Positions 74 through 34,273 of a stretch of DNA of 64,000 nt are shown here, piece after piece (position 1 is the first letter of the stretch; every line of letters starts with the position of its first letter). The notes beneath the pieces were generated by a model. It did no database searches. It saw only the letters and a program-made list of their open reading frames with translations, and had not been told where the DNA came from. The translations under genes and the position numbers were made by a program. The stretch is from the IMG/VR virus record IMGVR_UViG_3300009158_000031, positions 190,394-254,393 of that record. The stretch is one strand, 5' to 3'.

Positions 74-457
74 ATGTTTGTACCAAATCACATTCACGTC
101 CTTATTAAAGGTTATGTCAAAAATCCACCTCGAACAGAGGAACATCTAAATGATTGGTTTCGACGATTGGTCGAACGTGTAAGAATGGTAGTAGTTGCTG
201 GTCCAACTTCTGTATATGTTAATGAACCCGGAAATGAAGGTTTAACTGGAACCGTTACATTAGCAACCTCACATGCATCTATTCATGTATGGGATAACAT
301 TGAACCTGCAATGTTCCAATTCGATCTATATTCATGTTCAGAATTTACTCCACAGGAAGTTATCGAACACTTAGAAGAATTCGATCTAGTTTCATGCGAA
401 TATATGTTCATCGATCGTAATACTGAAATGAAAGTCGTAGAAACTGGAAATGTTTAA
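74..457 (+). CDS. speD: S-adenosylmethionine decarboxylase proenzyme
   Basis: GLTGTVTLATSHASIHVW matches the AdoMetDC xSHxSIHxW self-cleavage motif; also DLYSC; typical size. Confidence 0.85.
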   Translation: MFVPNHIHVLIKGYVKNPPRTEEHLNDWFRRLVERVRMVVVAGPTSVYVNEPGNEGLTGTVTLATSHASIHVWDNIEPAMFQFDLYSCSEFTPQEVIEHLEEFDLVSCEYMFIDRNTEMKVVETGNV

Positions 458-8132: not shown

Positions 8133-9140
8133 ATGGAAAGAAAATTAGCAAGCATTCAAGTCATTCGAGACATTCGTCCTATTGAAGGAGCAGATGCAAT
8201 CGAATTAGCAATCATTAATGATTGGCAAGTAGTAGTCGCAAAAAGCGTAGGTCATCAAGTTGGCGATCATGTTGTTTATTGTGAAATTGATTCATTCTTA
8301 CCTATAAGAGAAGAATTCGAATTCTTGCGAAAAAGTTCTTATAGGAAGATGGATGATCTAGAAGGATTTCGTCTTAGGACTATAAAACTTCGAGGACAAA
8401 TATCACAAGGACTTATCGTACCAATAAGTATATTTGGTGATTTTGGATGGACCGCATATGAAGGTCTTGATGTTACCGAAAGATTAGGAATTATAAAATA
8501 CGAACCACCTATCCCTGCAGAATTAGCCGGTAAAGTAAAAGGAAACTTTCCTTCATTTATACCAAAGACTGACGAAGAAAGAATTCAAAATCTAACTGAC
8601 AAATATGAGACTTGGAAAACTCAACCATTTTATGTTACTGAAAAATTAGATGGATCATCCGCAACCTACTACTTCCGCAATGGAGAATTTGGAGTGTGTT
8701 CTAGAAATCTAGATCTTGAAGAAACTGAAGGTAATACCTTTTGGAAGATTGCTCGAGAATTAAAGATAGAAGAATGGTTAGGAACACAATCAATTAATTA
8801 TGCCATTCAAGGTGAGTTAATTGGTGAAGGTATTCAAGGAAATCCTTATAAGATCAAAGGACAAACGGTTCGCTTCTTTAACGCATTCAATATAGACAAA
8901 TATGAATACTTAAGTTTAGAAGAATTCGAATCCCTAATCACTTCAATGAAGTTAAAAACCGTTCCAATTATCGATCGTGCATTTACTTTACCTAATACAA
9001 TCGAAGAACTTCTTAATTATGCCGATAAGAAAAGTGAATTGAATAATCAATTTGATCGTGAAGGTGTCGTTATTCGTAGTATCGATCGAAAAATCAGTTT
9101 CAAAGTAATCAGTAACAAATTTCTACTAAACGAAAAATAA
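8133..9140 (+). CDS. RNA ligase, DRB0094/Rnl5 family
   Basis: RKLASI N-terminus, KTDEERIQN, TEKLDGSS, GELIGEGIQGN, EGVV, FKVIS. Confidence 0.9.
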   Translation: MERKLASIQVIRDIRPIEGADAIELAIINDWQVVVAKSVGHQVGDHVVYCEIDSFLPIREEFEFLRKSSYRKMDDLEGFRLRTIKLRGQISQGLIVPISIFGDFGWTAYEGLDVTERLGIIKYEPPIPAELAGKVKGNFPSFIPKTDEERIQNLTDKYETWKTQPFYVTEKLDGSSATYYFRNGEFGVCSRNLDLEETEGNTFWKIARELKIEEWLGTQSINYAIQGELIGEGIQGNPYKIKGQTVRFFNAFNIDKYEYLSLEEFESLITSMKLKTVPIIDRAFTLPNTIEELLNYADKKSELNNQFDREGVVIRSIDRKISFKVISNKFLLNEK

Positions 9141-14109: not shown

Positions 14110-14319
14110 ATGCAAGACTTAATAGAATCTTTTGAATCGGTTAAGTATCGAATCAAAGCCGAAGGTATGGATTATTGCTTTAAGCATTACTCTAACTTCG
14201 AAGAAATTGAAGATAAAGAATTTCATAAACTAAGAAAGGCTTATATAAAAGCATCAGAGAACATTGAAGAGTATGTGAATTGTAAAATACAAGAACTCCA
14301 AAACGAAGATGGCGAATAA
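14110..14319 (+). CDS. hypothetical protein
   Basis: Operon ORF. Confidence 0.6.
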   Translation: MQDLIESFESVKYRIKAEGMDYCFKHYSNFEEIEDKEFHKLRKAYIKASENIEEYVNCKIQELQNEDGE

Positions 14320-15484
14320 CTCAATAATCAATTGGGAATTATATCAAAAGACTCTAAAACCTTCACATATACATATTGCAGAATTAGATTTTAAAATGAA
14401 AAACAAATTAGATATACAATATCAAGAACTTTTACAAACCATATTAGAACACGGGATTGATAAAGCAGATCGAACCGGAACAGGAACTCGTTCAATATTC
14501 GGTTATACTATTCGTCACAACATGTCAGATGGATTCCCTCTTCTCACAACCAAAAAGATGGCATGGAAATCTATCGTTACCGAGTTATTATGGTTCTTAA
14601 AAGGTGATACTAATATCAAGTACTTAGTTGATAATGATTGTCATATTTGGGATGGTGATGCTTATAAGAATTATGACAAACTTTGTATTGACACAAAGTG
14701 GATGGAACCGGTTAAAAAGGAACTAAATGGCGAAGTTTATGATATGGGAAGAAAATACGATCAAGAAGGGTTCATCAATCGTATCAAAACAGATGATGAA
14801 TTTGCTAAACAATGGGGAGATCTAGGTCCAATCTATGGTAAACAATGGAGAAATTGGGTTAGAAAAACTACACGAGACGAAAAGATTGTTGAACCTGGAG
14901 TATATGAAACGAGTATAGATCAAATCACAAACCTAATCAATGACATTAAAACAAATCCTGATTCACGAAGATTAATGGTCACTGCATGGAATCCTGCCGA
15001 ATTAGATCAAATGGTTCTTCCACCTTGTCATTATGGGTTTCAAATGTATACAAGAGAATTAGATCAAACGGAAAGAGTTATTCTAATGGATAAAAAATTA
15101 GGCGTTACGGAAAACCTTCCTGCATATTATACCGAAGATGAAATGATAAAACATAACATCCCAAAACGAGCAATCTCTCTTATGTGGAATCAACGAAGTG
15201 TAGATACCCTTTTAGGTTTACCATTCAATATTGCAAGTTATGGTTTACTATTAATGATGATTGCCGATGAAGTTAATATGGTTCCTGATCAGCTAATAGG
15301 TAATCTTGGAGATACTCACATATACAACAATCACGTCGATCAAGTAAAAGAACAAATCACTAGAACTCCATTTGAACTACCAACCGTTCATGTTAGAGAT
15401 GGTATTTTTTGTAGTTCTCATAATGATGTTATACTTCAAAATTACAATTCACATCCGGCAATCAAAGCACCTTTAAGTAATTAA
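14309..15484 (+). CDS. thyA: thymidylate synthase (with insertions)
   Basis: DRTGTGT, FPLLTTKK, ELLWF, LPPCH, QRSVD, PFNIASY, GDTHIY; start could be 14396. Confidence 0.95.
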   Translation: MANNSIINWELYQKTLKPSHIHIAELDFKMKNKLDIQYQELLQTILEHGIDKADRTGTGTRSIFGYTIRHNMSDGFPLLTTKKMAWKSIVTELLWFLKGDTNIKYLVDNDCHIWDGDAYKNYDKLCIDTKWMEPVKKELNGEVYDMGRKYDQEGFINRIKTDDEFAKQWGDLGPIYGKQWRNWVRKTTRDEKIVEPGVYETSIDQITNLINDIKTNPDSRRLMVTAWNPAELDQMVLPPCHYGFQMYTRELDQTERVILMDKKLGVTENLPAYYTEDEMIKHNIPKRAISLMWNQRSVDTLLGLPFNIASYGLLLMMIADEVNMVPDQLIGNLGDTHIYNNHVDQVKEQITRTPFELPTVHVRDGIFCSSHNDVILQNYNSHPAIKAPLSN

Positions 15485-18415: not shown

Positions 18416-19438
18416 ATGCAAATCTCTAATTATTTTAGTAAAGACAATCACCAAAGAGAAAGTAAACTCTTTGGTGAATTGTTATATTGTGGACACACTC
18501 AGCTAGTCCCACGAAATTTAGATTATTCAGTTTTAGCTAATACTGATAATCGATGGACTCTCATCAATAGAGATTATCAATATTTCATACAATCAAATGT
18601 TTGCTTACATCGACAAGGTGAAATTTGTAGTGGAAGCGGAAGCGGTAAAACGATGATGTGTAAAGCTCATTGTTGGACATATGACGTTGATGGTAAAATA
18701 AAAGGAACTCCTCATTTTGAAGAGAAGGTTGTTGGTGCACTAGAAAGAAAATCCCTAATCAATTTGAATGGTGCTCTTTTTTCAGGTCATGTGAATAATC
18801 TTATAGATCTAAAAGAAACTGGAGTAGATCATCTTATAGACCTTCATAAATATGATTTTGATAGCTCATCAAAGACAGAATATGCATTTAATTGGAAAAC
18901 TTTCGCTGAGGTTTATTTAGAAAATCTTCACATCTATGCAATGCATCCTGGATTACGTAAATTTGTAGATCCGCAAATACTCGAATGGCAATTTGGTCAA
19001 CAATGGTCACTACAAAAAATTGGTATTCGTCCTGATCTAAATGGTAATGATTCTGCATCATATACTGATATGATAGACTCTCTTAAACGAGACGGTATCA
19101 CACCGGAATTTGGAGCAGTTTGGATTTACATATATCCTAATATCATGATTGAATGGTACCCTAAAACAATTGCCATCTCTACCATTTATTCACCTGAACC
19201 AGAAGTTACCACCAATTATGTAGATCTTTTCTTTGAGAAAGGAACCACTGAAGAATTTAAAGAGATATTCAAACGAGTATACGCTGAAACGGCATTAGAA
19301 GACGAAGAAGCCTGTAGTATTATACATCGTGGTCGAAGAGCACTTTGGTTAAATGGAGAAACTGAAGGTGGACCCGTTCAACCTAAGCTAGAAGCCGGAG
19401 TAAAACACTTTTGGGATTGGTATAGCGATCAATCATAA
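18416..19438 (+). CDS. Rieske non-heme iron oxygenase alpha subunit
   Basis: CLH...CKAH Rieske motif; NWKTFAEVYLENLHIYAMH and ED mononuclear-Fe ligands. Confidence 0.88.
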   Translation: MQISNYFSKDNHQRESKLFGELLYCGHTQLVPRNLDYSVLANTDNRWTLINRDYQYFIQSNVCLHRQGEICSGSGSGKTMMCKAHCWTYDVDGKIKGTPHFEEKVVGALERKSLINLNGALFSGHVNNLIDLKETGVDHLIDLHKYDFDSSSKTEYAFNWKTFAEVYLENLHIYAMHPGLRKFVDPQILEWQFGQQWSLQKIGIRPDLNGNDSASYTDMIDSLKRDGITPEFGAVWIYIYPNIMIEWYPKTIAISTIYSPEPEVTTNYVDLFFEKGTTEEFKEIFKRVYAETALEDEEACSIIHRGRRALWLNGETEGGPVQPKLEAGVKHFWDWYSDQS

Positions 19439-20567: not shown

Positions 20568-21323
20568 ATGAAATCTATACTAATTGTAATTATGTTCTTG
20601 GCATCTACTGCCTTTGCACAAGATACTTCAAAGATCAATCCAATCAAAATACAAATTGGTCTTGGCGGAAATTATACTGATGGAAATGCTAAAATACTTG
20701 GATTCAATACCAACAATTCTATTACATATACCTCACTAAATCGTGAGTGGTCTTTGCTGCCATCATTTATTTACTCACAAGTACAACAAGATAATGAGTT
20801 CAAACCCAGACAGCGAGAACTATACATAACCGGTGCTGTTCAAGAAAGACGAGGTTCCGACAAAATTATTTCGGCTTTTGAACTAGAGACTTCATTAGTA
20901 AAACAAATCCGATTAAGAACATCAATTGGTCTTGGATGGAGTTTCGATATAATTCGAACACCTAAAACTAAATTCATCATATCCGAAGCCGCTGTATATG
21001 AATCATATTTATCAGATTTGATAATTGATAAAAACCTACAATCGCTTAGAGCATCTACTCGAATTAGATTTTCCACTAATGGGAAAGTCAATACCGATTT
21101 TGTAGCACTTATACAACCTTCAATATGGAATGATCGAGGAGTTAGTGCAGCTAATAATACAAATTCTCGCATATCTGCAACGATTGCTATACCAGTTACC
21201 AAGAAATTACAATTTGGAATAACCTCTACATTTATTGGATCTACCTATTCAAATTTCATTAATTCTGGAATCAATCCCGCTGACATAAATACAACTTTTT
21301 CACTCATATATAAAAATCTATAA
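20568..21323 (+). CDS. outer-membrane beta-barrel protein (DUF481-like)
   Basis: Signal peptide AFA|Q, GGNYTDGN, amphipathic strands, C-terminal FSLIYKNL. Confidence 0.7.
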   Translation: MKSILIVIMFLASTAFAQDTSKINPIKIQIGLGGNYTDGNAKILGFNTNNSITYTSLNREWSLLPSFIYSQVQQDNEFKPRQRELYITGAVQERRGSDKIISAFELETSLVKQIRLRTSIGLGWSFDIIRTPKTKFIISEAAVYESYLSDLIIDKNLQSLRASTRIRFSTNGKVNTDFVALIQPSIWNDRGVSAANNTNSRISATIAIPVTKKLQFGITSTFIGSTYSNFINSGINPADINTTFSLIYKNL

Positions 21324-21963: not shown

Positions 21964-22197
21964 ATGCAATATTATATAGGCATATTACCAGAAGATCGAG
22001 GTCGACTTAGATCCACGATAGAGTTTTTAAATGACAATCCCAATTGGCGATGGCAGGTTAAAGTCTTATCAGAATTTGACGATCCTGATGGATATTATAC
22101 ATTCCAAATGGAAGGGAATGAGGAGACTTATCGACACTTTCTTCGACTCTCTACTAACGAAGGATTTGTCAAATCTCTTAATCATTATGAAGAGTAG
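21964..22197 (+). CDS. hypothetical protein
   Basis: Operon ORF. Confidence 0.55.
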   Translation: MQYYIGILPEDRGRLRSTIEFLNDNPNWRWQVKVLSEFDDPDGYYTFQMEGNEETYRHFLRLSTNEGFVKSLNHYEE

Positions 22198-22444
22198 TTG
22201 GTTCGTTTATATAGTTCGTTGCTCTGATGGAACTCTGTATACCGGAATCACCGTTGACCTTCAAAAACGAGTGGCCTCTCACAACTCCAAGAAAGGAGCT
22301 AAATATACTGCGACTCGAACTCCTGTCGAGTTAGTTTGGTCTCAACCTTCAGAAACGAGATCCACTGCCGCGAAAGAAGAGTGGAGAATAAAACAGCTTT
22401 CCCGTACAGAAAAACTCGCCTTAATAGATAATCTTATATTATAA
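22187..22444 (+). CDS. GIY-YIG nuclease (UPF0213/YhbQ-like)
   Basis: WFVYIVRCSDGTLYTGIT..R...HN..GAKYT; start moved to MKSSW. Confidence 0.9.
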   Translation: MKSSWFVYIVRCSDGTLYTGITVDLQKRVASHNSKKGAKYTATRTPVELVWSQPSETRSTAAKEEWRIKQLSRTEKLALIDNLIL

Positions 22445-22569
22445 TAATCTAGTACAGATCACTCCCTTGCAAGTAGAGTAAATAAAAAGTTTGCTCACTC
22501 TAAACACACTCTTCTAATATAATCTACTACATCTTATATAGGATAAACCGCTTTATATAGAAGGTAATA

Positions 22570-22900
22570 CGCTATATAAGGTAATAATCTATATAGATAA
22601 CTCTCCTCCTCGTCTGACTAGTCGTGGTGTTGTGAGCGGAGAAATCCGGTAAGCCACGGAGGAAGCCGGTATTTGCAGATCCGCTTATAGTGACACCTTT
22701 TGTTTTCCGCATTCTCACAAAGATTTGCCGCATATACCAACGAGCCGTTAAGTACCGAGGAATCCATAATCGTAATGGCTCTCAATCACCCAGGGCTCGT
22801 TGCTAACTCCCATCACCAAAGCTACTCCGTCCACAACCCGCCTACCCTTATATAGTGATAATTGGATCCGGTGGTAATTCCGCCTTACCTTATATAAGGA
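22570..22900 (+). ncRNA. GC-rich structured non-coding element of unknown class
   Basis: Several stems read by eye, including CAACGAGCC/GGCTCGTTG; no long ORF. Confidence 0.45.
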
Positions 22901-22925
22901 ATATTGAATCCAGTAGCGATTAAGA

Positions 22926-22987
22926 TGTTAATAACTTTCTCACAAAACATTTTTTTATTACAACCTTTTTTATTATATTTGTATATA
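22926..22987 (+). promoter_or_regulatory. promoter repeat copy 4
   Basis: TGTTAATAACTTT...TATTATATTTG. Confidence 0.8.
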
Positions 22988-23007
22988 CATAATAACTAAT
23001 ACACTAT

Positions 23008-23286
23008 ATGGAAGAACAAGAAGATTTTAATCAGGAACTCGATCCTGTACAAAAGGCCGAGTTAGAATTACAATATCAAGAAGAAATAGGAAAGGCCATG
23101 AGAAGTGCATTTGCTTATATAGAGGAAGATCTAGGCTGGGAGGCTTGGATCGAGAATCGAGTGATTGGTGACGCGGCCAAGAAGCGGAGAATCCTCGATA
23201 ATATGATGAAATGGTTTGCTTCTCCAGAGGTGGAGGAATATGAGAAATCCGCTCGCATCAAAAGGGCTATTGATACTCTCGTATAG
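23008..23286 (+). CDS. acidic protein with UVR-like C-terminal motif
   Basis: EEYEKSARIK. Confidence 0.6.
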   Translation: MEEQEDFNQELDPVQKAELELQYQEEIGKAMRSAFAYIEEDLGWEAWIENRVIGDAAKKRRILDNMMKWFASPEVEEYEKSARIKRAIDTLV

Positions 23287-23288
23287 GT

Positions 23289-23370
23289 TGTTAATAACTT
23301 TGTTAATAAGTTTTGAAACAAATAGTAAAATAAATTTTTTTATTCCACAAATAAGTATTATATTTATATA
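23289..23370 (+). promoter_or_regulatory. promoter repeat copy 5 (two tandem boxes)
   Basis: TGTTAATAAC at 23289, TGTTAATAAG at 23301, TATTCCACA at 23341. Confidence 0.8.
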
Positions 23371-23398
23371 TTATTTAATTAACTTAAAAAAGATCTAT

Positions 23399-23653
23399 AT
23401 GCAAATCAATCAAATTAAAACCGGTTCCTTTATTCGTAACAGCGGTGGATTTACCTTCCACGTAACACTTACCGAGAAGTTCGCTCACCTTCACCCTATC
23501 GATGATAACACATCTACCTCAACGAAGGTACTACCTATAGCGGTATTCAATCAGTTAATTCGTAATCACAACTTCGTTACCGTTACCAATCCCAATAACG
23601 CACACGAAAGAATTCTTACTAAATCATATGGATCAAGATTATTAACACAATAA
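23399..23653 (+). CDS. hypothetical early protein
   Basis: Start moved to MQINQ after the promoter. Confidence 0.6.
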   Translation: MQINQIKTGSFIRNSGGFTFHVTLTEKFAHLHPIDDNTSTSTKVLPIAVFNQLIRNHNFVTVTNPNNAHERILTKSYGSRLLTQ

Positions 23654-23716
23654 TGTTAATAACTTTCCCATCAAACATTTTTTTATACCAAAAAAAAGTA
23701 TTATATTTATACTATA
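23654..23716 (+). promoter_or_regulatory. promoter repeat copy 6
   Basis: Same architecture and spacing. Confidence 0.8.
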
Positions 23717-23749
23717 TTTAAAAATCAAATAAAACAAAAAAAATCAATT

Positions 23750-24067
23750 ATGGCAAAATCATCTAGAGGCGGATTAACAGTTTACGATAAACAAGATGTG
23801 GTAATATCACAATTCGCAAAAATCGTACGTAACGAACAATACAGAAAAGAACCAACATGGTTCGAACAACAGGTAATCGATTCTAAACAACGTACTGCGG
23901 ATTATCAAAAACGTATGGTGAACAACCCACCTCAACCCCGTATCTCACACTATAATCCAGACAATATCTTAAATCGCACCAGACACTTATCTGCGGAAGA
24001 TCGTAAAATCGCAATCAAACAATTTCTTAAAGAAGAAAAGGCTGCTAATAATTTAATCAATCAGTAA
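23750..24067 (+). CDS. hypothetical early protein
   Basis: ORF after promoter. Confidence 0.65.
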   Translation: MAKSSRGGLTVYDKQDVVISQFAKIVRNEQYRKEPTWFEQQVIDSKQRTADYQKRMVNNPPQPRISHYNPDNILNRTRHLSAEDRKIAIKQFLKEEKAANNLINQ

Positions 24068-24087
24068 TCTCTAAATAAAAAAAACAT

Positions 24088-24411
24088 ATGTCAGCAAGAC
24101 CACACTCCCTAAATGATGAATTACCTTCTAATCCAAATATTAGAAGAGATCAATACAAACGTATACTTGGTATTCTTAAAATACATCGTGATCGTCCTCA
24201 ATTAGCTTTCGATCTTATAAGAGATTACGCTAAAGGTGTAGATAAGGTGAAAACCGTTTTCCTATACCCCAATGGTACTGGTGATATCCCAACCGAAATT
24301 CGAGTAGTTTCTGAAGGTTCACATACCGAATCTATGGCTACACAAATCATGACTACCGTTTATTCATTTCCTTTCGAACGTCCTGAAATCGTTGAACCAC
24401 CCGTATTGTAG
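24088..24411 (+). CDS. hypothetical protein
   Basis: ORF with A-rich leader. Confidence 0.6.
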   Translation: MSARPHSLNDELPSNPNIRRDQYKRILGILKIHRDRPQLAFDLIRDYAKGVDKVKTVFLYPNGTGDIPTEIRVVSEGSHTESMATQIMTTVYSFPFERPEIVEPPVL

Positions 24412-24473
24412 AATACATATAATAATAAACCACTCCACTCTCACACAGACGGTGGACTAAAAACAACCAATCA

Positions 24474-25562
24474 ATGACAATATCTCAAAAGCAATTTAGT
24501 GACTTCCGAGAAGACGCACTAAAAAATCAACCACTCCGCAAGGAAATCGCACTAGCCGATATTCGTTTCGTCACTATGGATGCAATCGAATATGCCGGTT
24601 TAAACTTTGGACTTGCTCGTCCTGCACTTAAAGATCTAATGCGTATATTAGGTGTAAACATGAATATCGAATCTCGCTTATCTGAATCTATCGGTGAGGA
24701 TGGTGCGAGGAACTTCCTTAATGGTCTAAGATCTGCACTATCTAAATCAGCCGGATCTATTATCTTATCGGTTACACCAGATCGCATCATTCAACGTATC
24801 ACTAAAGGTGGAAAAGAAACTTCACTCTTTACTGCACCTACCTACTTCAATACAGTAGATCGCTTTATGAATACCAACTCCGGTATGGAAATAAAGGATA
24901 TGCACTTCAATCGCGAAACAGGTGGAATATCGCTCTCTGCGGCTTCACCCAAATCAGAATTTAACGTGGGTAACTTTAACGATGAGGTTTTCCATGGAGG
25001 ATTAAATCTCTCTATCACTGCCGATGGAATTAAAGCCGCTCCTTATCTACACCGTCTAGTGTGTACGAACGGAATGGTAACACGTTCTTTCGAGGAATCC
25101 TTTAATCTTAATCGCAACACCACTGAAAGTTGGACTTCCTTCTGGCAGAATCTAGAAAGAATCGAACACTCTGGATTTCAACCCATCGCCTTTACCAACA
25201 AGGTACTCGCTGCGAAAAACACTACTGCTTCTTTCGCTGAGATGGAAAGATCAATGAACCTCATCCTAGGTAATTCAAAATGTGATCTAGACAATCTACC
25301 CCAATTCATCAATTACCGTCCGACCTTCAATCGTCTACACTCTACAGGAATCGATACCCTGAAGTTAACACCAGGACAGAAACGCAATCTACGTACTGGC
25401 TTAACCATGTGGGATTGCATTAATGGAGTTACCGATTTTGCCTCACACAATTATGGTTTTGAAAAAACAGCTAACTGTGATCGCCACTTACAGTTACAAG
25501 CTGGTGATATCCTCACTAAGGACTTCGACACACAAAACCTAATCCTGAATCAACCTTACTAA
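24474..25562 (+). CDS. DUF932-like phage/plasmid protein
   Basis: LHRLVCTNGM; TMWDCINGVTDFASH. Confidence 0.7.
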   Translation: MTISQKQFSDFREDALKNQPLRKEIALADIRFVTMDAIEYAGLNFGLARPALKDLMRILGVNMNIESRLSESIGEDGARNFLNGLRSALSKSAGSIILSVTPDRIIQRITKGGKETSLFTAPTYFNTVDRFMNTNSGMEIKDMHFNRETGGISLSAASPKSEFNVGNFNDEVFHGGLNLSITADGIKAAPYLHRLVCTNGMVTRSFEESFNLNRNTTESWTSFWQNLERIEHSGFQPIAFTNKVLAAKNTTASFAEMERSMNLILGNSKCDLDNLPQFINYRPTFNRLHSTGIDTLKLTPGQKRNLRTGLTMWDCINGVTDFASHNYGFEKTANCDRHLQLQAGDILTKDFDTQNLILNQPY

Positions 25563-25612
25563 GAGTAAGGAACTGCGAGTGGAGAAAACCACTCTAATTT
25601 GATAATACCACT

Positions 25613-25639
25613 AAGGCTGCTCACTAGAGTGGCCTTTTT
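25613..25639 (+). terminator. intrinsic terminator
   Basis: AAGGCTGCTC-ACTA-GAGTGGCCTT then TTT. Confidence 0.75.
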
Positions 25640-25682
25640 GTGGTTTACACAGCGAGACTGCCCTATTACTCACCTTTACCAC

Positions 25683-26030
25683 CTAGAAGAGACTAGATAC
25701 CTTCTAGTCTCACCTAATAAGGGCCTGTACAGATCTAGACCAGCAAAACAACATCCTACTAGATCTAGATCTTAACAAGAAGAGCCTAGATAGACTAGAT
25801 GAGTACTAGCAGTGTACTAGTAGGATCTATTAAGGCTAGAAGCAGACTAGAAGAGCTCAATATATCCACATATAGGACAGAAGAGTGCTATAAAGACTCA
25901 TATATACTCATTATATCACCGATAGATCATCTAGAAGCCGCTGAGGTGAGCTATAGGGACTAGAAAGTCAAAAAAAGGTCACAAAAAGCCAAAAAGGATC
26001 ACTTTTAGCCAAAAAGGATCAAAAAGGCCA
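25683..26030. repeat. helically phased CTAG array and phased A-tract repeats
   Basis: 14 CTAG within 25683-25963; AGCCAAAAAGGATCA at 25987 and 26007. Confidence 0.8.
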
Positions 26031-26583
26031 CATGTGCTCCTCGTAATCCATGTCTTGTCCGCGTTAACGTCCCGTGGAAGTCCAGTCCTGGCTAGGGCCC
26101 ATGAAATTCCGGACATTTTTGACCCTCGAAACTTTGGGCCGGAAATAAGGCGACGCACATCCCACTCTATACGGAAAGCCCTTTCTGGTAACGCGAGTAA
26201 GAGAAGCCCAAAGGCCTTTTTAAAAAAATTTTCCAGACTATATAGGATCTCTCGAAACTCATTGACTAATATATAGAGTAGCCGGTGAGTCTTTTTAAAC
26301 CTTTCTGACTCTTTGTTTTGCTCGAAGGAGAAGGTACTGACAGAGTGAAGACGGCTACTTTGTTTACAGTAATCTGTTAATAGTAAACTCTTACCCGACG
26401 CAAACGACGAGGGGCCATCCAGACTTCTCTGATGGTTTATTTCGCATCCCTCTTTTATACTCTCGGTATAAATTCGAGACCTCGATTGAACTGCCGATAC
26501 CGCGACTCGCATCTGATAACCACGATAAATAAACCATATACTCGATCTTACCGGCGAATCGTGTAAGTCATATAAAAACTAAT

Positions 26584-26910
26584 ATGGAAATGAAAACTGT
26601 AATGTACTGTTCAACTATTGAAGATGCACGAGAGTGTATTGAAGATGATACGACGATATTTCCGCTTCTCGAAAGAGCTCTGATTACCATGTGGAAGACA
26701 ACCTCTCACTCTGAGGAAGTTCTAGAAATCCGTTGTATGGATGTAGGTGCTTCTATGTGGGTAACTCTCCGTCGAAGTGAGTGTGATGAAGTATGGGAGA
26801 AGATCATCACTTGGAGAAGTGGAAGAGAAGAGTGGGAAGAACTGACGGTACTTAAAGATATTCGAGATGAGTGGTTCAACTCTAAGAAGGTTGTGGAGCC
26901 AGTCCATTGA
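26584..26910 (+). CDS. hypothetical protein
   Basis: ORF after CATATAA motif; weak UVR-like end. Confidence 0.6.
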   Translation: MEMKTVMYCSTIEDARECIEDDTTIFPLLERALITMWKTTSHSEEVLEIRCMDVGASMWVTLRRSECDEVWEKIITWRSGREEWEELTVLKDIRDEWFNSKKVVEPVH

Positions 26911-27016
26911 AAAAAAAAAGCCCTCCAGCGTTCAAACTCTGAGTTTCAGGAATAAATAGAAATATAAACGAACAAAAAAGCGCGCAGCGGCTTCCACCTC
27001 TGAGTACCAAGAATAA

Positions 27017-27394
27017 ATGAAATCAATACCTACATATCACGAATTCCTTAATGAGACCGTCTCATTTAATACCGATACTACTGGTCGTGAAGATTGGGAT
27101 GATGATCTAAAGAAACATTCTAGAGATTTTACTCAATCTATAGTAATAATGAGTCCGATGGATTTCTTGAAGAGAGTTCAATATCACCGATTTGAGATTA
27201 ATAAATCTAAAGTGGCTAATTATGTTAAAGAATTTCGTGGTAATGTCAAAGGAATTCCAGCACCAACCATGTGGTTCTCTGATAAGTTTCAATACGATAA
27301 AGGACTTGCTCCTGCTTTTCATGATGGATCTCATCGCATGCTAGCTCTACAAGAAGTAGGGATACGAGAAGTTCCGGTTAAAATTATATACTAA
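27017..27394 (+). CDS. ParB/Srx-like protein with capsid-targeting-like N-terminus
   Basis: MKSIPTYHEFLNE; DGSHRMLAL...VPV. Confidence 0.65.
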   Translation: MKSIPTYHEFLNETVSFNTDTTGREDWDDDLKKHSRDFTQSIVIMSPMDFLKRVQYHRFEINKSKVANYVKEFRGNVKGIPAPTMWFSDKFQYDKGLAPAFHDGSHRMLALQEVGIREVPVKIIY

Positions 27395-27395
27395 G

Positions 27396-28016
27396 ATGAA
27401 AAACATTCAAACATACGAAAGCTTCTTAAATGAACTTCGACATTCAAAAGAGTTTTTAATAGACCTATTTTCTAAAATGGATATTTTAGATAATGATGTA
27501 TACAAAAACATTTTAATCCATTACATTGAACAACCACAAAATTTAGAAAAACAAGAGTTCATTGATTTAGTTTCATGGTTGATCCAGAATAAAAACAAGT
27601 ACAGTGAAGTACTAAAGCCTAAAAATGGATATGCATACAGAGGAACTTCAATAACTCCTGATATGTTTCATAAATTAAAAAATGGATTATCAAAAAAAGA
27701 AGGTGGTATAAGCATATTTAACTTTCCTTATACCAGCGAATCAGAAGCACAAAGTTGGACATATGATTATAAAGTAGCAATGAGGTTTGCGGATAAAGGT
27801 CTTTTAAATAACCCTAGATTAGAAAAAGGAGCTAGACCAGCTATTTTAAGAGCTAAGATAGATGATACATTTGTAGGTAATCCTAAGTTGACTGGTCCCA
27901 TAGCTGACCGATTAAGTCTGAAGTCCGAAAAGGAAATATTTCATTTAGGGAATTCTATAAAAGATGCTGAATGGATGATATTCTCAGCCGATATAGAATT
28001 AGGAAAATTTAATTAG
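27396..28016 (+). CDS. ADP-ribosyltransferase-fold protein with capsid-targeting-like N-terminus
   Basis: MKNIQTYESFLNE; YRG, QSWT...A..FA, EKE (R-S-E triad). Confidence 0.6.
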   Translation: MKNIQTYESFLNELRHSKEFLIDLFSKMDILDNDVYKNILIHYIEQPQNLEKQEFIDLVSWLIQNKNKYSEVLKPKNGYAYRGTSITPDMFHKLKNGLSKKEGGISIFNFPYTSESEAQSWTYDYKVAMRFADKGLLNNPRLEKGARPAILRAKIDDTFVGNPKLTGPIADRLSLKSEKEIFHLGNSIKDAEWMIFSADIELGKFN

Positions 28017-28026
28017 TATAAAGACT

Positions 28027-28425
28027 ATGAAATCAATATCGACATATGATGAATTCTTAAATGAGTCTATTCGTGCAGAAGAGGCTTATCGAGATACAGG
28101 AGCTATTCAAACCGTCATTGATGGAAAGAGAGATATGGGATTCATTACCATCAAATCATCGGTTGATGTGAGCGAAAAAGAATTCTGGACATTGGTGAAG
28201 ATACACGATCTGAGTACCATTCACCTATCTGGAAATGAATATGATGCCTATATCTATTATCATAAAGGAGCCGAGCGAGGTGCCAGAGAGCTAGCGAAGA
28301 TTGCTAACAAATACGGTGGATATCTATCACATGAAGCGACTGAACGAGAATCTCGTCGAATAGGCGAACTTCTAGGTTACGATCGACGAGACATAGATGA
28401 TTATATAAAGAAAAACTACAAATAA
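28027..28425 (+). CDS. hypothetical protein with capsid-targeting-like N-terminus
   Basis: MKSISTYDEFLNE; IGELLGY. Confidence 0.65.
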   Translation: MKSISTYDEFLNESIRAEEAYRDTGAIQTVIDGKRDMGFITIKSSVDVSEKEFWTLVKIHDLSTIHLSGNEYDAYIYYHKGAERGARELAKIANKYGGYLSHEATERESRRIGELLGYDRRDIDDYIKKNYK

Positions 28426-28580
28426 TGGATAATGGAAAACGTAATCAATTAAAACCTGTGAGAATCGCTGATGTTAATAAGTTGGTGGCTAATGATCCGA
28501 GGATTCTTATTAAAGTTAATCATAAAGGTGGAAGTGGAGTTTCTCTTATGAACACTAATAAAATTAAAGACCGAAAATAA
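28425..28580 (+). CDS. small basic protein (51 aa, missing from ORF track)
   Basis: TAATG coupling; fills the gap to 28583. Confidence 0.5.
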   Translation: MDNGKRNQLKPVRIADVNKLVANDPRILIKVNHKGGSGVSLMNTNKIKDRK

Positions 28581-28582
28581 GA

Positions 28583-29287
28583 ATGAGAAAGATAGCCTTA
28601 TATGAGCAATGGATAAATGAAATTGGTGATTCATCAGCCAAGCCATTCAAATGGAGTAGTCCTGTTATCGCTGTTAATATGAAGAGATGGATAGATGATT
28701 GTATCGAAGGAGCTGCAGACAAGAAGATGAGTGGAACTCAAGAAGATATTTACTATAAAACTAAAACATTTAGATATGAATTCCGATCGGATGTGACTAA
28801 TACAAATTATCATGTACACATCGGTGGATTTGTTGGTAGAAATATCTGGATTGCCTTTCAAGGAGAAAAACCTAAAGATTGGGTTGGATATCATATAATT
28901 GCCGGATTAGGATTTGGTGTTGAAGGAGATTTCGATAAAACTACTAATCTTAATGAACAATTCCGAGTAATGGCAACCGTTACCGAATGTGCCATTGATT
29001 TTCTACAACGATTCTTGGATGATGGACGAATCAAGATTGATAAATTTCACATGAAACCTAAGGCCGATCACGAAGAACAAAAAGGAATAGATTCTCGTCG
29101 AGCTAAACTATATGCCCCTTATATTAAAGCCGCATTCCGCAAACTCAAAACGAAGAAGGATTATTACATAGATCAAGAGGCAGATGGATTCGTTCTTCAT
29201 TTCGGAAAGGTCATAATGAACTCTCCTTATTCCACTTCAGTATTAGCATCAACCTTTGAAAATGAAGAATCCAATGAAATCAATTAA
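28583..29287 (+). CDS. hypothetical protein with capsid-targeting-like N-terminus
   Basis: MRKIALYEQWINE; RRAKLY. Confidence 0.65.
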   Translation: MRKIALYEQWINEIGDSSAKPFKWSSPVIAVNMKRWIDDCIEGAADKKMSGTQEDIYYKTKTFRYEFRSDVTNTNYHVHIGGFVGRNIWIAFQGEKPKDWVGYHIIAGLGFGVEGDFDKTTNLNEQFRVMATVTECAIDFLQRFLDDGRIKIDKFHMKPKADHEEQKGIDSRRAKLYAPYIKAAFRKLKTKKDYYIDQEADGFVLHFGKVIMNSPYSTSVLASTFENEESNEIN

Positions 29288-30344
29288 GCTATATGAAGCC
29301 TTCTTAACAGAAGGAGGCTGGGCAACAACCAAAACACAAGGAACCGTTCTGACTCCAGCTGTTATCGCTGAGGTTGTGAAGGTTATGGATCTGATCAATA
29401 CGGGATTCAATGGACATTTGAGAGAGCTTGAACTTCCCACTCTAGATATTCTAAAACCTATTGGCAGTGGAACTTGGTGGAGTGAAGATGTGACCGAACA
29501 ACCAGACAAAACTTATGGAGATGTCGATTACATGGTTGCCTATCCCACTTTGAAGCTCACTGCTGGTCGTGATAGAGAAGATGAGATTGCTACGGTGAAG
29601 CTATACAATACCGAGCTGCTCATGTGGTTAGAGGAAGAAGGTATCACCGATGTAGATATTGATGAGACGAAGAAAATATCTTCGGATGTTTCTCTTAAGT
29701 TAATTGCGATCGTTCCCTTTAATGGAACTGATGCATATGTTCAGGTTGATATGGTTGTTACTCACAAAGAGTATAGTGATTGGGCAGTATTCCGTATGAC
29801 TCCTATTCGTAACGTTAAAGGTTTTGTGCTAGGAAATCTCTACTCTTCATTTGGTGAAGTTCTAGATTTGTCTATTCAGGCAAGAGGAGTAAGAGCTAAA
29901 TTTGAAGGTCAGGTTATGAAGCCTTATTCTAAACGAGCTAATGTTGAGGATCGCATCATCTCACAAAATGCTGAATCATTCATGACCGATATCGCTCGTT
30001 TCTTTTGGGAACAGAGCGGAACAGATATTCCATTCACCGCTACTCCTATCGAATCTTGGAAGGGAATGGATCGCAACTCTCCTCGATTCGAAGATCTAGC
30101 CGAAGGAATTCGTCTGGTTGCCGAGACACTAGGTCAGCTAGACGAATTTGGAACTACTATTAAATACAAATCAGCTGCTGATCTACTAAATGCAGTGATT
30201 GCTCAATATACGAAGAAGATGATGGAAGCTTATAATTCTGCTAAATTTGATAAGGCAGAAACTCCAGCAGCAAAAGCCATTATCACTAAAGTTAGAGCAA
30301 CCATTGACGAATATATCAGTCTGGCTAAATCACTACTTACATAA
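29274..30344 (+). CDS. nucleotidyltransferase-like protein with capsid-targeting-like N-terminus
   Basis: MKSIKLYEAFLTEGG; IGS...GDVD...VQVD Pol-beta-type motifs. Confidence 0.6.
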   Translation: MKSIKLYEAFLTEGGWATTKTQGTVLTPAVIAEVVKVMDLINTGFNGHLRELELPTLDILKPIGSGTWWSEDVTEQPDKTYGDVDYMVAYPTLKLTAGRDREDEIATVKLYNTELLMWLEEEGITDVDIDETKKISSDVSLKLIAIVPFNGTDAYVQVDMVVTHKEYSDWAVFRMTPIRNVKGFVLGNLYSSFGEVLDLSIQARGVRAKFEGQVMKPYSKRANVEDRIISQNAESFMTDIARFFWEQSGTDIPFTATPIESWKGMDRNSPRFEDLAEGIRLVAETLGQLDEFGTTIKYKSAADLLNAVIAQYTKKMMEAYNSAKFDKAETPAAKAIITKVRATIDEYISLAKSLLT

Positions 30345-30351
30345 AAGTAAT

Positions 30352-30726
30352 ATGTTATACTATTCACCAAAAATTGCAGTCGGAGAATCGACTGTAGCAG
30401 GCAGAGGTGTATTTGCCATAGCCGATATAGAGGCTGGAGAGGTACTTGAAGAGTGCCACTTCTTTTTACTAACTAATGGTAATCATTCAGCTATGGATGA
30501 TACTTTAAAAGAGATGGTATTCGCATGGCCGGCATATAATGATGTTCATCAATTTGCTGTTGTACTAGGCAGTGGAACTGTTTATAATCATTCATATGAA
30601 AACAATGCAACCTGGGATACTGATGAAGCTAAATGCTGTTTCAGATTTTCTTCTACTCGAGACATAAAGGCCGGTGAAGAGATATTCACAAATTATAACC
30701 GAAGCGGAGGAAATCACTTTGATTGA
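30352..30726 (+). CDS. SET-domain methyltransferase
   Basis: GRGVFA..DI.AGE, YNHS, RDIKAGEEIFTNY. Confidence 0.9.
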   Translation: MLYYSPKIAVGESTVAGRGVFAIADIEAGEVLEECHFFLLTNGNHSAMDDTLKEMVFAWPAYNDVHQFAVVLGSGTVYNHSYENNATWDTDEAKCCFRFSSTRDIKAGEEIFTNYNRSGGNHFD

Positions 30727-30752
30727 TAAATATAAAAACACACAAAAGCTAA

Positions 30753-33719: not shown

Positions 33720-34273
33720 TGTTCAAGAAATTTAGACAATTCATTAATGAAGATATTCATATACCTTCCGGTAAATGGATAGACACTGACCTTAAAGGTC
33801 AGGATGATGATATGATGCAACTCATATGGACAATGTATACTGACACATACTCTAAACAAGGATTAGATTTCTCTGCCGATGATTATGCTGAACTTAAAAC
33901 TAAATACCAAGCAACATTCTTAAAGGATGTTGACCATGATCGTATTCCAGATGCCTTTATTATATACAAGAAAACGAAGTATGGAAATAAGATTGCTCTT
34001 CTAGGAACTAATGATAAGAAGACTGCAAAACGAGATCTTCTAGAAAAAACTATTTCATTACTTAAAAATCCTGGTTGGTTGTTAGAGGCCTCTCGTAAAA
34101 TGGAAGAGATTCTTTCAAATTCAAATGTTCCTTATATTGAAGATCCTGAAATCATTGCTGATATTGTCGGTAAAGACAAGAAACCTGAAATGGTTAAACA
34201 TGGATATTATACAAGACTTCTTTCAAAAACACCAAAGCGTATCTTAAAACGCATGTATGGTAAGGTCAAATAG
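33719..34273 (+). CDS. hypothetical protein with capsid-targeting-like N-terminus
   Basis: MFKKFRQFINE. Confidence 0.65.
   Translation: MFKKFRQFINEDIHIPSGKWIDTDLKGQDDDMMQLIWTMYTDTYSKQGLDFSADDYAELKTKYQATFLKDVDHDRIPDAFIIYKKTKYGNKIALLGTNDKKTAKRDLLEKTISLLKNPGWLLEASRKMEEILSNSNVPYIEDPEIIADIVGKDKKPEMVKHGYYTRLLSKTPKRILKRMYGKVK

What the first reader, a model, noticed from the sequence alone, without database searches (positions are those of the whole stretch)
18416..19438. Phage Rieske oxygenase, possibly putrescine-hydroxylase-like
Complete Rieske and mononuclear Fe motifs are unusual in a phage, and no reductase is adjacent. From memory, NWKTF.EVYLE, HPGL..FV, YP.IM.EWYP, GRRAL and HF..WY resemble a conserved betaproteobacterial Rieske family; putrescine 2-hydroxylase of Bordetella/Ralstonia is a Rieske enzyme. 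With speD at 74-457 this hints at phage polyamine remodelling and cross-phylum gene capture.
Basis: partly seen in the sequence, partly recalled or inferred. Interest (0 to 1): 0.65.

Follow-up and report, generated by a model that had tools for sequence, protein, structure and literature searches.

The report
Phage-encoded putrescine-hydroxylase-type Rieske oxygenase
A large freshwater phage carries an intact iron-sulfur oxygenase from the bacterial family that adds a hydroxyl group to the polyamine putrescine, and related phages place it beside a small decarboxylase gene, so these phages probably make a modified polyamine in the infected cell.

Summary
Window 18416-19438(+) is an intact 340-aa Rieske non-heme-iron oxygenase alpha subunit with every metal ligand present. 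It lies in a 254-kb freshwater phage genome that encodes no reductase or ferredoxin.

It is not a choline, carnitine or aromatic oxygenase. It belongs, at 37-41% identity over its full length, to a separate family found once per genome in 87 of 101 sampled Betaproteobacteria. In two genomes a member of this family sits inside an alcaligin-type siderophore cluster, at the position of AlcE, the putrescine C-hydroxylase.

The phage copies form their own clade and are under purifying selection. That clade sits beside the Alteromonas and Bdellovibrio-type copies, not inside the Betaproteobacteria.

Context points to a diamine substrate:
- Two cellular relatives lie next to a Lys/Orn/Arg decarboxylase.
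- One related phage has its SpeD homolog overlapping the Rieske gene by 8 nt.
- Every Rieske-bearing viral record of at least 100 kb that could be searched whole also carries that SpeD homolog.

The window's "speD" (74-457) is not a true AdoMet decarboxylase. It is the pyruvoyl ornithine/arginine-decarboxylase type.

Best reading: decarboxylase, then putrescine, then 2-hydroxyputrescine, with electrons from the host. The product has not been measured. Capture from a betaproteobacterium is not supported.

The parts
18416..19438 (+). Rieske non-heme-iron monooxygenase alpha subunit, 340 aa plus stop, of the putrescine 2-hydroxylase / AlcE-type family
   Evidence: ORF. Pfam Rieske plus Ring_hydroxyl_A. 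Family alignment A1. AF2 model with pLDDT 93.8. Family placement.
18539..18721 (+). Rieske [2Fe-2S] domain, residues 42-102. The cluster ligands C63, H65, C82 and H85 are encoded at 18602-18670.
   Evidence: Pfam PF00355. The ligands are invariant in A1 and A3. It is the only Rieske domain in the phage genome.
18851..19432 (+). Catalytic domain, residues 146-339. Bridging E169 is at 18920-18922. The iron ligands are H172 (18929-18931), H177 (18944-18946) and D296 (19301-19303).
   Evidence: Pfam PF00848. Alignment to CntA 6y8j, where E169 aligns with E205 and H172/H177 align with the HxxxxH motif. These residues are invariant in all clades.
74..457 (+). SpeD (AdoMetDC-fold) homolog, 127 aa. 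It is probably a pyruvoyl-dependent ornithine (or arginine) decarboxylase that supplies the diamine. The cleavage site is T65-S66 (266-271), with H71 and C88 conserved.
   Evidence: PF02675, 45 bits. TIGR03330 scores 36.1 against a cut-off of 75.65. The motif is LATSHASIHVWD...QFDLYSC, which lacks the Glu of the Glu-Ser site and the Pro of HTWPE. Its only kin among cultured phages are pelagiphage HTVC201P-type proteins. It is adjacent to or co-occurs with the Rieske gene in related phages.

Best explanation
The gene encodes a working Rieske monooxygenase of the beta-subunit-less kind that is trimeric in its solved relatives. It belongs to the family that includes the betaproteobacterial putrescine 2-hydroxylase and the AlcE-type hydroxylase of alcaligin clusters.

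Proposed mechanism:
1. A host reductase or ferredoxin passes electrons from NAD(P)H to the Rieske cluster (C63, H65, C82, H85). The phage encodes no such partner.
2. The electrons cross the subunit interface through E169 to the mononuclear Fe(II) held by H172, H177 and D296.
3. That iron activates O2 and hydroxylates a methylene carbon of a small diamine.

The most likely substrate is putrescine, giving 2-hydroxyputrescine. The diamine is probably supplied by the phage's own SpeD-derived pyruvoyl decarboxylase at 74-457, an ornithine decarboxylase type. Together the two genes would form a short phage pathway: ornithine to putrescine to 2-hydroxyputrescine.

Shown here: gene integrity, fold, ligands, family membership, lack of a phage reductase, and gene-neighbourhood links to decarboxylases and to an alcaligin-type cluster.

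Inferred: the substrate, the product, the electron donor, the substrate of the decarboxylase, and the benefit to the phage.
For: (1) The enzyme is intact.
- Both domains are present and all ligands are invariant.
- The AF2 model has pLDDT 93.8 and pTM 0.90.
- dN/dS is 0.165.
- Fragments of the gene occur in three lake metatranscriptome libraries.

(2) Family placement.
- The protein is 37-41% identical over its full length to a family with at least 596 genome hits, nearly all Betaproteobacteria.
- That family occurs once per genome in 35 of 37 genomes of one family and in 87 of 101 evenly drawn genomes of the order.
- Other Rieske proteins in the same genomes score 82 bits or less, against more than 500 bits for the family member.
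- 2-Hydroxyputrescine is the polyamine typical of this class, and putrescine hydroxylases were identified in Bordetella and Ralstonia (PMC7857480, PMC10385936).

(3) Link to putrescine hydroxylation.
- In G361 and G181 a family member lies in the gene order N-monooxygenase, MFS, acyltransferase, IucC-type synthetase, Rieske, TonB receptor.
- That is the alcaligin layout, where AlcE is the iron-sulfur C-hydroxylase (PMC3510459).
- These AlcE-like copies nest among the Burkholderiaceae housekeeping copies.

(4) Diamine link in the clade nearer the phage.
- Two cellular members (L115, L008) are divergently adjacent to an OKR_DC_1 Lys/Orn/Arg decarboxylase.

(5) Phage link.
- The SpeD homolog overlaps the Rieske gene by 8 nt in L122 and is 5.4 kb away in L113.
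- It is present in G000, G041, G042 and G044.
- Phage SpeD homologs of the HTVC201P type were shown to be arginine or ornithine decarboxylases, and all five freshwater phage proteins assayed were ornithine decarboxylases (PMC9992855).

(6) Residue conservation.
- Of 114 columns invariant in the Beta clade, 68 are kept strictly and 24 by majority in the viral clade. These include the acidic residues E165, E169, E246, E291, E295 and E326.

(7) Redox partners.
- Family members in cells also lack an adjacent reductase, so depending on a general host donor is normal for the family.
Against: - No product was measured.
- The sequences and gene ids of the proteins characterised by Li et al. 2016 could not be obtained. 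The equation 'Beta clade = putrescine 2-hydroxylase' therefore rests on distribution, the alcaligin-cluster context and recollection of that paper.
- The phage clade is only 37-41% identical to the Beta clade. Twenty-two Beta-invariant positions differ, some next to the iron ligands (175-176, 299, 321-324), so specificity may have shifted.
- The decarboxylases next to the cellular relatives cannot be assigned to Orn, Lys or Arg. The window's SpeD homolog cannot be typed as ODC or ADC with certainty.
- In the window itself the two genes are 18 kb apart.
- The SpeD homolog is much more widespread than the Rieske gene (more than 1,883 clusters), so co-occurrence alone is weak evidence.
- The RNA-library fragments may be carried-over DNA.
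Confidence: 0.6

Rival explanations
1. Same family and chemistry, but a different amine substrate. The phage clade might hydroxylate cadaverine, agmatine, an N-acylated or N-hydroxylated diamine, or a longer polyamine such as homospermidine or spermidine, rather than free putrescine.
For: Twenty-two positions invariant in the Beta clade differ in the viral clade, some beside the iron ligands. The adjacent cellular decarboxylases score best with lysine and arginine decarboxylase models, but lie below every cut-off. The closest characterised relative of the SpeD homolog, HTVC201P, is an arginine decarboxylase (PMC9992855).
Against: Most family-specific residues are kept, including the conserved acidic ones. 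All five assayed freshwater phage SpeD homologs of this type were ornithine decarboxylases (PMC9992855). The window protein has QFDxY, where the pelagiphage arginine decarboxylases have QLDVY. The phage genome has no arginase/agmatinase-family (PF00491) gene for turning agmatine into putrescine.
Confidence: 0.25
2. A quaternary-ammonium or N-methyl amine oxygenase, such as choline monooxygenase, carnitine CntA, glycine betaine GbcA or stachydrine Stc2. This is what the automatic 'choline monooxygenase' labels on relatives suggest.
For: The nearest solved structures are Stc2 and CntA, with TM 0.80-0.81. The best PDB sequence hit is CntA at E 1.5e-10. JGI labels several relatives 'choline monooxygenase'.
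Against: Identity to these enzymes is only 17-20%. The GbcA model scores 33.6 bits against a cut-off of 670. The protein sits in a separate, well-supported family with its own conserved residues and its own gene neighbourhoods of decarboxylases and an alcaligin-type cluster. No CntB/GbcB-type reductase accompanies it.
Confidence: 0.05
3. The enzyme serves DNA hypermodification. A hydroxylated polyamine would be attached to phage DNA, by analogy with putrescinyl-thymine of phage PhiW-14. This is a downstream use of the product, not a different enzyme activity.
For: Polyamine-modified thymine exists in PhiW-14, whose host makes 2-hydroxyputrescine (PMC5977210). The phage has a thymidylate-synthase-fold gene 3 kb upstream.
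Against: That gene passes the NCBIfam thymidylate synthase equivalog cut-off (352.6 against 325), so it looks like an ordinary ThyA. No hydroxymethyl-dU kinase or transferase was seen among the neighbours, though these were not searched for across the whole genome.
Confidence: 0.05
4. An aromatic-ring-hydroxylating dioxygenase large subunit, as the Pfam domain name and the 'phenylpropionate dioxygenase-like' labels imply.
For: The Pfam catalytic domain is named Ring_hydroxyl_A. There are weak NCBIfam hits to HcaE, BenA and AntA.
Against: Those hits score 16-20 bits against cut-offs of 670-830 and cover only the Rieske domain. There is no beta subunit and there are no pathway genes. Aromatic dioxygenases are more distant structural matches, with TM 0.67-0.75 and rmsd 6-9 A.
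Confidence: 0.02

Closest known systems
Putrescine 2-hydroxylase of Bordetella bronchiseptica and Ralstonia solanacearum (Li et al. 2016, ACS Chem Biol 11:2782; cited in PMC7857480 and PMC10385936) and the AlcE C-hydroxylase of alcaligin clusters (PMC3510459)
   Same: Both have the same two-domain Rieske architecture and stand alone without a beta subunit or a dedicated reductase. Homology runs the full length at 37-41% identity to the betaproteobacterial family that holds the Ralstonia, Cupriavidus and Burkholderia copies and the AlcE-position copies. Most family-specific residues are shared.
   Different: The window gene is encoded by a virus and is about 25-40 residues shorter at the N-terminus (340 aa against 365-395). 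It sits in a separate clade with Alteromonadaceae and Bdellovibrionota-type sequences. Twenty-two Beta-invariant positions are changed. It is paired with a SpeD-fold pyruvoyl decarboxylase rather than standing alone or lying in a siderophore cluster. The characterised proteins themselves could not be aligned here.
CntA carnitine monooxygenase (PDB 6y8j, 6zgp) and Stc2 stachydrine demethylase (PDB 3vca)
   Same: These are the best structural matches, with TM 0.80-0.81. They are also beta-subunit-less Rieske oxygenases acting on small cationic nitrogen compounds. The bridging residue is a Glu (E169 aligns with CntA E205) and the HxxxxH...D iron site is the same.
   Different: Identity is only 17-20%. 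They belong to a different family, act on different substrates (quaternary ammonium) and carry out different chemistry (C-N cleavage or demethylation). They come with dedicated reductases.
Phage polyamine enzymes catalogued in 'Functional polyamine metabolic enzymes and pathways encoded by the virosphere' (PMC9992855)
   Same: The SpeD homolog at 74-457 is of the HTVC201P-like type. That paper showed such proteins to be pyruvoyl arginine or ornithine decarboxylases in marine and freshwater phages.
   Different: That catalogue contains no hydroxylase: the word does not occur in its main text. A putrescine-hydroxylase-type gene in phages would extend it.

Membership tests
Rieske non-heme-iron oxygenase, alpha subunit | Rieske [2Fe-2S] motif CxH-x(15-17)-CxxH | tested here: met
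   C63-L-H65-x16-C82-K-A-H85 is present. PF00355 matches at E 2.8e-9, and the ligands are invariant in A1.
Rieske non-heme-iron oxygenase, alpha subunit | 2-His-1-carboxylate mononuclear iron site in a Ring_hydroxyl_A / SRPBCC-fold catalytic domain | tested here: met
   H172, H177 and D296 are present. PF00848 matches at E 4e-23. The AF2 model has pLDDT 93.8, and Foldseek gives TM 0.8 to CntA and Stc2.
Rieske non-heme-iron oxygenase, alpha subunit | Acidic residue that bridges the Rieske His of one subunit to the iron His of the next | tested here: met
   E169 aligns with CntA E205 and is invariant in the family. The oligomeric state itself was not modelled.
Rieske non-heme-iron oxygenase, alpha subunit | A reductase or ferredoxin partner that delivers electrons | tested here: not met
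   None is encoded in the phage record: no Fer2, NAD_binding_1 or Pyr_redox_2 domain and no second Rieske domain. Cellular family members also lack an adjacent partner. A host donor must be assumed.
Putrescine 2-hydroxylase / AlcE family | Full-length homology to the single-copy betaproteobacterial family, clearly separated from other Rieske oxygenases | tested here: met
   Identity is 37-41% over residues 1-336, with tblastn E 1e-69 to 1e-75. Family copies score above 500 bits against the A1 profile, while other Rieske proteins in the same genomes score 82 bits or less. The family is one clade against the outgroups, with support 98-99.
Putrescine 2-hydroxylase / AlcE family | The family includes the hydroxylase of alcaligin-type (C-hydroxylated putrescine) siderophore clusters | tested here: met
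   L112 and L111 show the order PF13434 N-monooxygenase, MFS, PF13523 acyltransferase, IucC plus FhuF, family Rieske, TonB receptor. This holds for cellular members, not for the phage gene itself.
Putrescine 2-hydroxylase / AlcE family | Conservation of the family-specific (substrate-pocket) residues | tested here: inconclusive
   Of 114 Beta-invariant columns, 68 are kept strictly, 24 by majority and 22 are changed. Which residues line the pocket could not be read, because no coordinates or solved structure of the family were available.
Putrescine 2-hydroxylase / AlcE family | Direct sequence relation to the experimentally characterised proteins (Li et al. 2016) and to Bordetella pertussis AlcE | not testable with these tools
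   The paper is not held and no gene ids or sequences were obtainable. A Ralstonia sp. ortholog lies beside xseB-ispA-dxs, which agrees with my unverified recollection of the R. solanacearum locus.
Putrescine 2-hydroxylase / AlcE family | Forms 2-hydroxyputrescine from putrescine | not testable with these tools
   This needs expression and LC-MS.
Quaternary-ammonium Rieske monooxygenases (GbcA, CntA, choline monooxygenase, Stc2) | Score above the curated family model cut-off | tested here: not met
   NF058607 GbcA scores 33.6 bits against a cut-off of 670 and covers the Rieske domain only. Identity to CntA and Stc2 is 17-20%.
Bona fide S-adenosylmethionine decarboxylase (for the gene at 74-457) | Equivalog score, the Glu-Ser self-cleavage site, and the Pro of the HTWPE motif | tested here: not met
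   TIGR03330 scores 36.1 against a cut-off of 75.65. The site reads Thr-Ser and the motif IHVWD has no Pro. PMC10407285 gives that Pro as fully conserved in true AdoMetDCs. The phage has no spermidine synthase.
Pyruvoyl ornithine/arginine decarboxylases derived from SpeD (SpeDC/SpeDA) (for the gene at 74-457) | Pyruvoyl-forming Ser plus catalytic His and Cys are retained, and the protein is related to characterised members | tested here: inconclusive
   S66, H71 and C88 are conserved. Identity to HTVC201P AXH71538, an arginine decarboxylase, is 33-40%. Thr, Gln, Phe and Tyr occur in the central region, as named for the ODC type in PMC10407285, but their positions are given only in a figure. 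The characterised freshwater ODC sequences were not retrievable.

The most novel reading that the evidence does not exclude
A lineage of large freshwater phages carries its own two-gene route: a SpeD-derived pyruvoyl ornithine decarboxylase followed by a Rieske putrescine 2-hydroxylase. This would make 2-hydroxyputrescine, a polyamine otherwise typical of Betaproteobacteria, inside a host that does not normally make it (possibly Bacteroidota). It would be a new class of viral auxiliary metabolic gene. It would also offer a handle on the still unknown physiological role of 2-hydroxyputrescine, for example as a counter-ion for packaging a genome of more than 250 kb, as a polyamine the host cannot convert or break down, or as a precursor for DNA modification.
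Probability: 0.4. Interest if true: 0.75.

Novelty: new member of a known kind. Interest (0 to 1): 0.6.

Why it matters
Polyamines are needed for phage replication and DNA packaging. A recent survey of polyamine enzymes encoded by viruses (PMC9992855) lists decarboxylases, synthases, acetyltransferases and deacetylases, but no hydroxylase.

If the phage enzyme makes 2-hydroxyputrescine, several things follow:
- C-hydroxylation joins the list of ways viruses alter polyamines.
- The SpeD-derived decarboxylases of phages would feed more than spermidine synthesis.
- A small two-gene system, easy to express, becomes available for asking what 2-hydroxyputrescine is for. That question is still open even for the Betaproteobacteria that all make it.

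The work also corrects automatic labels ('choline monooxygenase', 'phenylpropionate dioxygenase-like', 'S-adenosylmethionine decarboxylase') that would mislead metabolic readings of viral metagenomes.

Tried and rejected
- Literature. The full-text searches for the putrescine 2-hydroxylase paper, its gene ids and alcE found only secondary citations. The ACS Chem Biol paper is not held, and a locus tag recalled from memory (RSc2224) occurs in no held paper.
- A second, partial family copy in the MAG labelled 'Bordetella parapertussis' (L091/L095) was checked as a possible alcE. It is a fragment with a TGA stop, lying beside unrelated genes (glycosyltransferase, MsrA), not in a siderophore cluster.
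- I tried to match the SpeD homolog to the five assayed freshwater phage ornithine decarboxylases by accession. The cluster look-up returned no accession numbers, and the papers' supplements hold no sequences.
- The ATP-grasp gene beside the speD-Rieske pair in L122 was tested as a possible third member of the module. Its homolog in the window's phage lies about 100 kb away, next to the clamp loader, so it is a core gene and not part of the module.
- The 'careful' tree did not finish in the time allowed. The quick IQ-TREE trees with SH-aLRT support are reported instead, so deep branching within the non-Beta group is unresolved.
- The host could not be identified. There are only hints towards Bacteroidota: 33% GC, thyA 73% identical in DNA to Flavobacterium phages, TerL kin that include Tenacibaculum, Flavobacterium and Prevotella phages, and a DUF481 protein whose nearest clusters are viral and Bacteroidota.
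- Complex prediction was also not used.
- Operators' notes. Read laying was given 2,501 letters. Only genetic code 11 was used.
Full report
**1. What is there**

Window 18416-19438(+) is a clean 340-codon ORF in a long run of same-strand, tightly packed genes.
- Pfam finds a Rieske [2Fe-2S] domain at residues 42-102 and the catalytic domain of Rieske oxygenase alpha subunits at residues 146-339.
- The cluster motif is C63-x-H65-x16-C82-x2-H85. The iron ligands are H172, H177 and D296. The bridging acid E169 aligns with E205 of carnitine monooxygenase CntA.
- All of these are invariant in the family alignments.
- An AlphaFold2 model built on the family alignment is confident, with pLDDT 93.8 and pTM 0.90.
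- Against the 78%-identical ortholog of a related viral contig, dN/dS is 0.165.
- Short contigs from three lake metatranscriptome libraries lie inside the gene at 96-100% identity. This is compatible with transcription but does not prove it, because DNA can be present in such libraries.

**2. The genome**

- The window is the last 64 kb of a 254,393-bp virus record, estimated 83% complete. The same phage occurs in IMG/VR and in freshwater metagenomes from many studies.
- Neighbours of the gene are phage-typical: RNA ligases, a methyltransferase, thymidylate synthase, an endolysin (PG_binding_1 plus GH19), a GIY-YIG gene and many genes with no Pfam match.
- The large terminase is nearest to those of huge uncultured phages, Sphingomonas phage PAU, Tenacibaculum phages PTm1/PTm5, a Flavobacterium phage and the Lak phages.
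- The host is unknown. Bacteroidota is hinted at by 33% GC, by thyA being 73% identical in DNA to Flavobacterium phages, and by a DUF481 outer-membrane protein whose nearest clusters are viral and Bacteroidota.
- The phage record has no plant-type ferredoxin, no NAD-binding reductase domain, no flavoprotein reductase and no second Rieske domain. Electrons must therefore come from the host.

**3. Which family**

The nearest solved structures are Stc2 and CntA, Rieske monooxygenases without a beta subunit that act on small cationic nitrogen compounds. The match is TM 0.80-0.81 but only 17-20% identity. The curated GbcA model scores 33.6 bits against a cut-off of 670. The protein shares their fold group but is not a member of those families.

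By sequence it belongs to a sharply separate family of 340-395-residue proteins.
- A scan of one genome per species found at least 596 members. The best 80 are almost all Betaproteobacteria: Ralstonia, Cupriavidus, Burkholderia, Polynucleobacter, Limnobacter, Gallionella, Chromobacterium, Vogesella and others. They are 36-41% identical over the full length.
- In these genomes the family copy scores above 500 bits with the family profile, while the next Rieske protein scores 82 bits or less.
- The gene is present once per genome in 35 of 37 genomes of one family, and in 87 of 101 genomes drawn evenly from the order.
- It stands alone, without a reductase. In two betaproteobacterial loci examined (L101, L022) it lies beside xseB-ispA-dxs.
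- This near-universal, single-copy spread matches the distribution of 2-hydroxyputrescine, the polyamine that marks this class. Putrescine hydroxylases were identified in Bordetella bronchiseptica and Ralstonia solanacearum (PMC7857480, PMC10385936). That the enzyme is a Rieske protein is my recollection of Li et al. 2016, which is not held in the library.

**4. An independent tie to putrescine C-hydroxylation**

Alcaligin is built from C-hydroxylated putrescine units. The review PMC3510459 states that alcE encodes an iron-sulfur protein that performs this C-hydroxylation.
- I searched 401 genomes of the order for IucA/IucC synthetases and found 17 carriers. I then searched those 17 for the family.
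- In two of them the family gene lies directly after the synthetase gene.
- Pfam scans give the same order in both: diamine N-monooxygenase (PF13434), MFS exporter, acyltransferase (PF13523), IucC-type synthetase with FhuF domain, then the family Rieske protein. A TonB-dependent receptor follows in L112 (confirmed by Pfam); in L111 a 712-aa ORF follows that was not scanned.
- One of these genomes also has a second, higher-scoring 'housekeeping' copy elsewhere.
- In the tree the two AlcE-position proteins nest among the Burkholderiaceae housekeeping copies, with support 99.
- The family therefore includes enzymes placed exactly where a putrescine C-hydroxylase is required.

**5. Where the phage gene sits in the family**

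The family splits into two groups.
- The Beta clade has support 98.
- The second group holds an Alteromonadaceae clade (44-46% identical to the phage protein), a few small clades including a Bdellovibrionaceae MAG, and one clade that contains the window protein. That clade has 48 rows with support 97 in the first tree, and 19 rows with support 89 in the second.
- All eight rows verified as viral fall in that clade: IMG/VR contigs L002, L004, L005, L006 and the 25-kb contig of P0066, plus two long contigs with gp32/UvsY/UvsW or phage helicase and endolysin genes.
- The phage genes are thus an old, diversified viral lineage, not a recent pick-up from a betaproteobacterium. The donor cannot be named.
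- The family is rare in viruses. Eight distinct IMG/VR contigs carry it, and no phage in the deposited phage-genome collection does.

**6. Evidence on the substrate of the phage clade**

(a) Residue conservation. Of 114 alignment columns at least 93% invariant in the Beta clade, with the AlcE-position proteins included, 68 hold the same residue in at least 90% of viral-clade sequences and 24 hold it as the majority. The conserved blocks are NWKTFxExYxExxH, HPGL, PNxMxEWYP, YxETxxED and GR, with six conserved glutamates. Twenty-two columns differ, including 175-176, 299 and 321-324.

(b) Cellular neighbours. Two members of the non-Beta group, on a 140-kb cellular contig (L115) and in a Bdellovibrionaceae MAG (L008), are divergently adjacent to 66%-identical OKR_DC_1 decarboxylases of the lysine/ornithine/arginine type. 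Their exact substrate cannot be assigned.

(c) Phage neighbours.
- In IMG/VR contig G438 (L122) the SpeD homolog (2547-2963) and the Rieske gene (2956-4065) are on the same strand and overlap by 8 nt.
- In a 135-kb phage contig (L113) they are 5.4 kb apart.
- In the window's phage and in G041, G042 and G044 both genes are present, 18-45 kb apart.
- The records without a SpeD homolog are fragments of 21-52 kb, estimated 8-19% complete. For one further 114-kb contig only 10 kb either side of the Rieske gene could be read; no SpeD homolog lies there.

Three independent pairings of 'decarboxylase plus this Rieske family' point to the decarboxylation product, a diamine, as the substrate.

**7. The 'speD'**

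The 127-residue protein at 74-457 has the AdoMetDC fold but fails the AdoMetDC equivalog model, scoring 36.1 against a cut-off of 75.65.
- Its processing site is Thr-Ser, not Glu-Ser. It also lacks the Pro of HTWPE, which PMC10407285 reports as fully conserved in true AdoMetDCs.
- The phage has no spermidine synthase, agmatinase/arginase or deoxyhypusine/homospermidine synthase homolog.
- Among deposited phage genomes, its only relatives are pelagiphage proteins of the HTVC201P type. HTVC201P's protein is an arginine decarboxylase. Five homologs from uncultured freshwater phages were all ornithine decarboxylases (PMC9992855).
- The window protein's family reads QFDxY where the pelagiphage arginine decarboxylases read QLDVY. 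Gln, Thr, Phe and Tyr are named as diagnostic of the ornithine type in PMC10407285. I could not see their positions, so this is only suggestive.
- An ornithine decarboxylase would make putrescine directly.

**8. Best explanation and its limits**

The phage encodes a functional Rieske monooxygenase of the putrescine 2-hydroxylase/AlcE family. It most likely converts putrescine into 2-hydroxyputrescine, using putrescine made by the phage's own pyruvoyl decarboxylase or by the host, and drawing electrons from a host reductase.

I put this at about 0.6. The main alternative, at about 0.25, is the same chemistry on another di- or polyamine. Quaternary-amine and aromatic substrates are unlikely.

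The benefit to the phage is not shown. Possibilities are a counter-ion for packaging a very large genome, a polyamine the host cannot convert or degrade, or a building block for DNA modification. The nearby thymidylate synthase passes the ThyA equivalog cut-off, so nothing here points to a hydroxymethyl-dU pathway.

**9. Novelty**

The enzyme family is known in bacteria. Its presence in phages, and its pairing with a SpeD-derived decarboxylase, appears in no paper of the searched library. The survey of polyamine enzymes of viruses contains no hydroxylase. I rate it a new member of a known kind in a new biological setting, and it can be tested with two small genes.

**10. Procedural notes**

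Read laying received 2,501 letters. Only table 11 was used.

Noticed in passing
window 14309-15484 (+): A thymidylate synthase of 391 aa, about 70-120 residues longer than usual, with an N-terminal extension and internal inserts. It still passes the NCBIfam ThyA equivalog cut-off (352.6 against 325). Its DNA is 73% identical to thyA of Flavobacterium phages vB_FspM_immuto.
   Followed up: partly
window 20568-21323 (+): A phage-encoded DUF481-type outer-membrane beta-barrel protein with a signal peptide. The nearest Atlas clusters are viral and Bacteroidota. It may be a host-derived moron and a hint to the host.
   Followed up: partly
window 52318-53895 and 55408-56388 (+): A NodU/CmcH-like carbamoyltransferase (PHROG 1601, E 5e-113) and a nucleotide-sugar epimerase (PHROG 540) lie close together. 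This suggests a phage-encoded sugar or glycan modification module.
   Followed up: no
window 34358-39325 (+): An ORF of 1,655 aa with no PHROG match at E 1e-5. Several other large ORFs (40599-41801, 43111-44205, 61609-62742) also have none.
   Followed up: no
window 8133-9140 and 48725-49828 (+): Two RNA-ligase-type genes sit in one 64-kb stretch. One is PHA02142/RNA_ligase and the other is PHROG 562, 'RNA ligase and tail fiber attachment catalyst'.
   Followed up: no
window 22000-36000: G+C rises to 0.36-0.40 here, against 0.31-0.34 elsewhere, and the GC skew changes sign at about 20-26 kb and 36-44 kb. This may be a mosaic or differently derived block.
   Followed up: no
L111 (G181:C3:92000-108000) and G181:C4:140845-141885: One Burkholderiales genome has two family copies. 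The housekeeping one scores 527 bits and the more divergent one, at 434 bits, lies in the alcaligin-type cluster. This fits duplication and recruitment into siderophore synthesis.
   Followed up: partly
L122 4127-5617 (-); G000:C1:109217-110608: A RimK-like ATP-grasp protein of about 496 aa is conserved at 68-75% identity across these phages, next to the clamp loader. In two relatives the SpeD homolog is inserted between these two core genes.
   Followed up: partly
L012 (Gemmatimonadota MAG) and L008 (Bdellovibrionaceae MAG): Family members occur outside the Pseudomonadota. The Gemmatimonadota copy groups with a Pelomicrobium sequence inside the Beta clade, which suggests lateral transfer or a binning error.
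   Followed up: no
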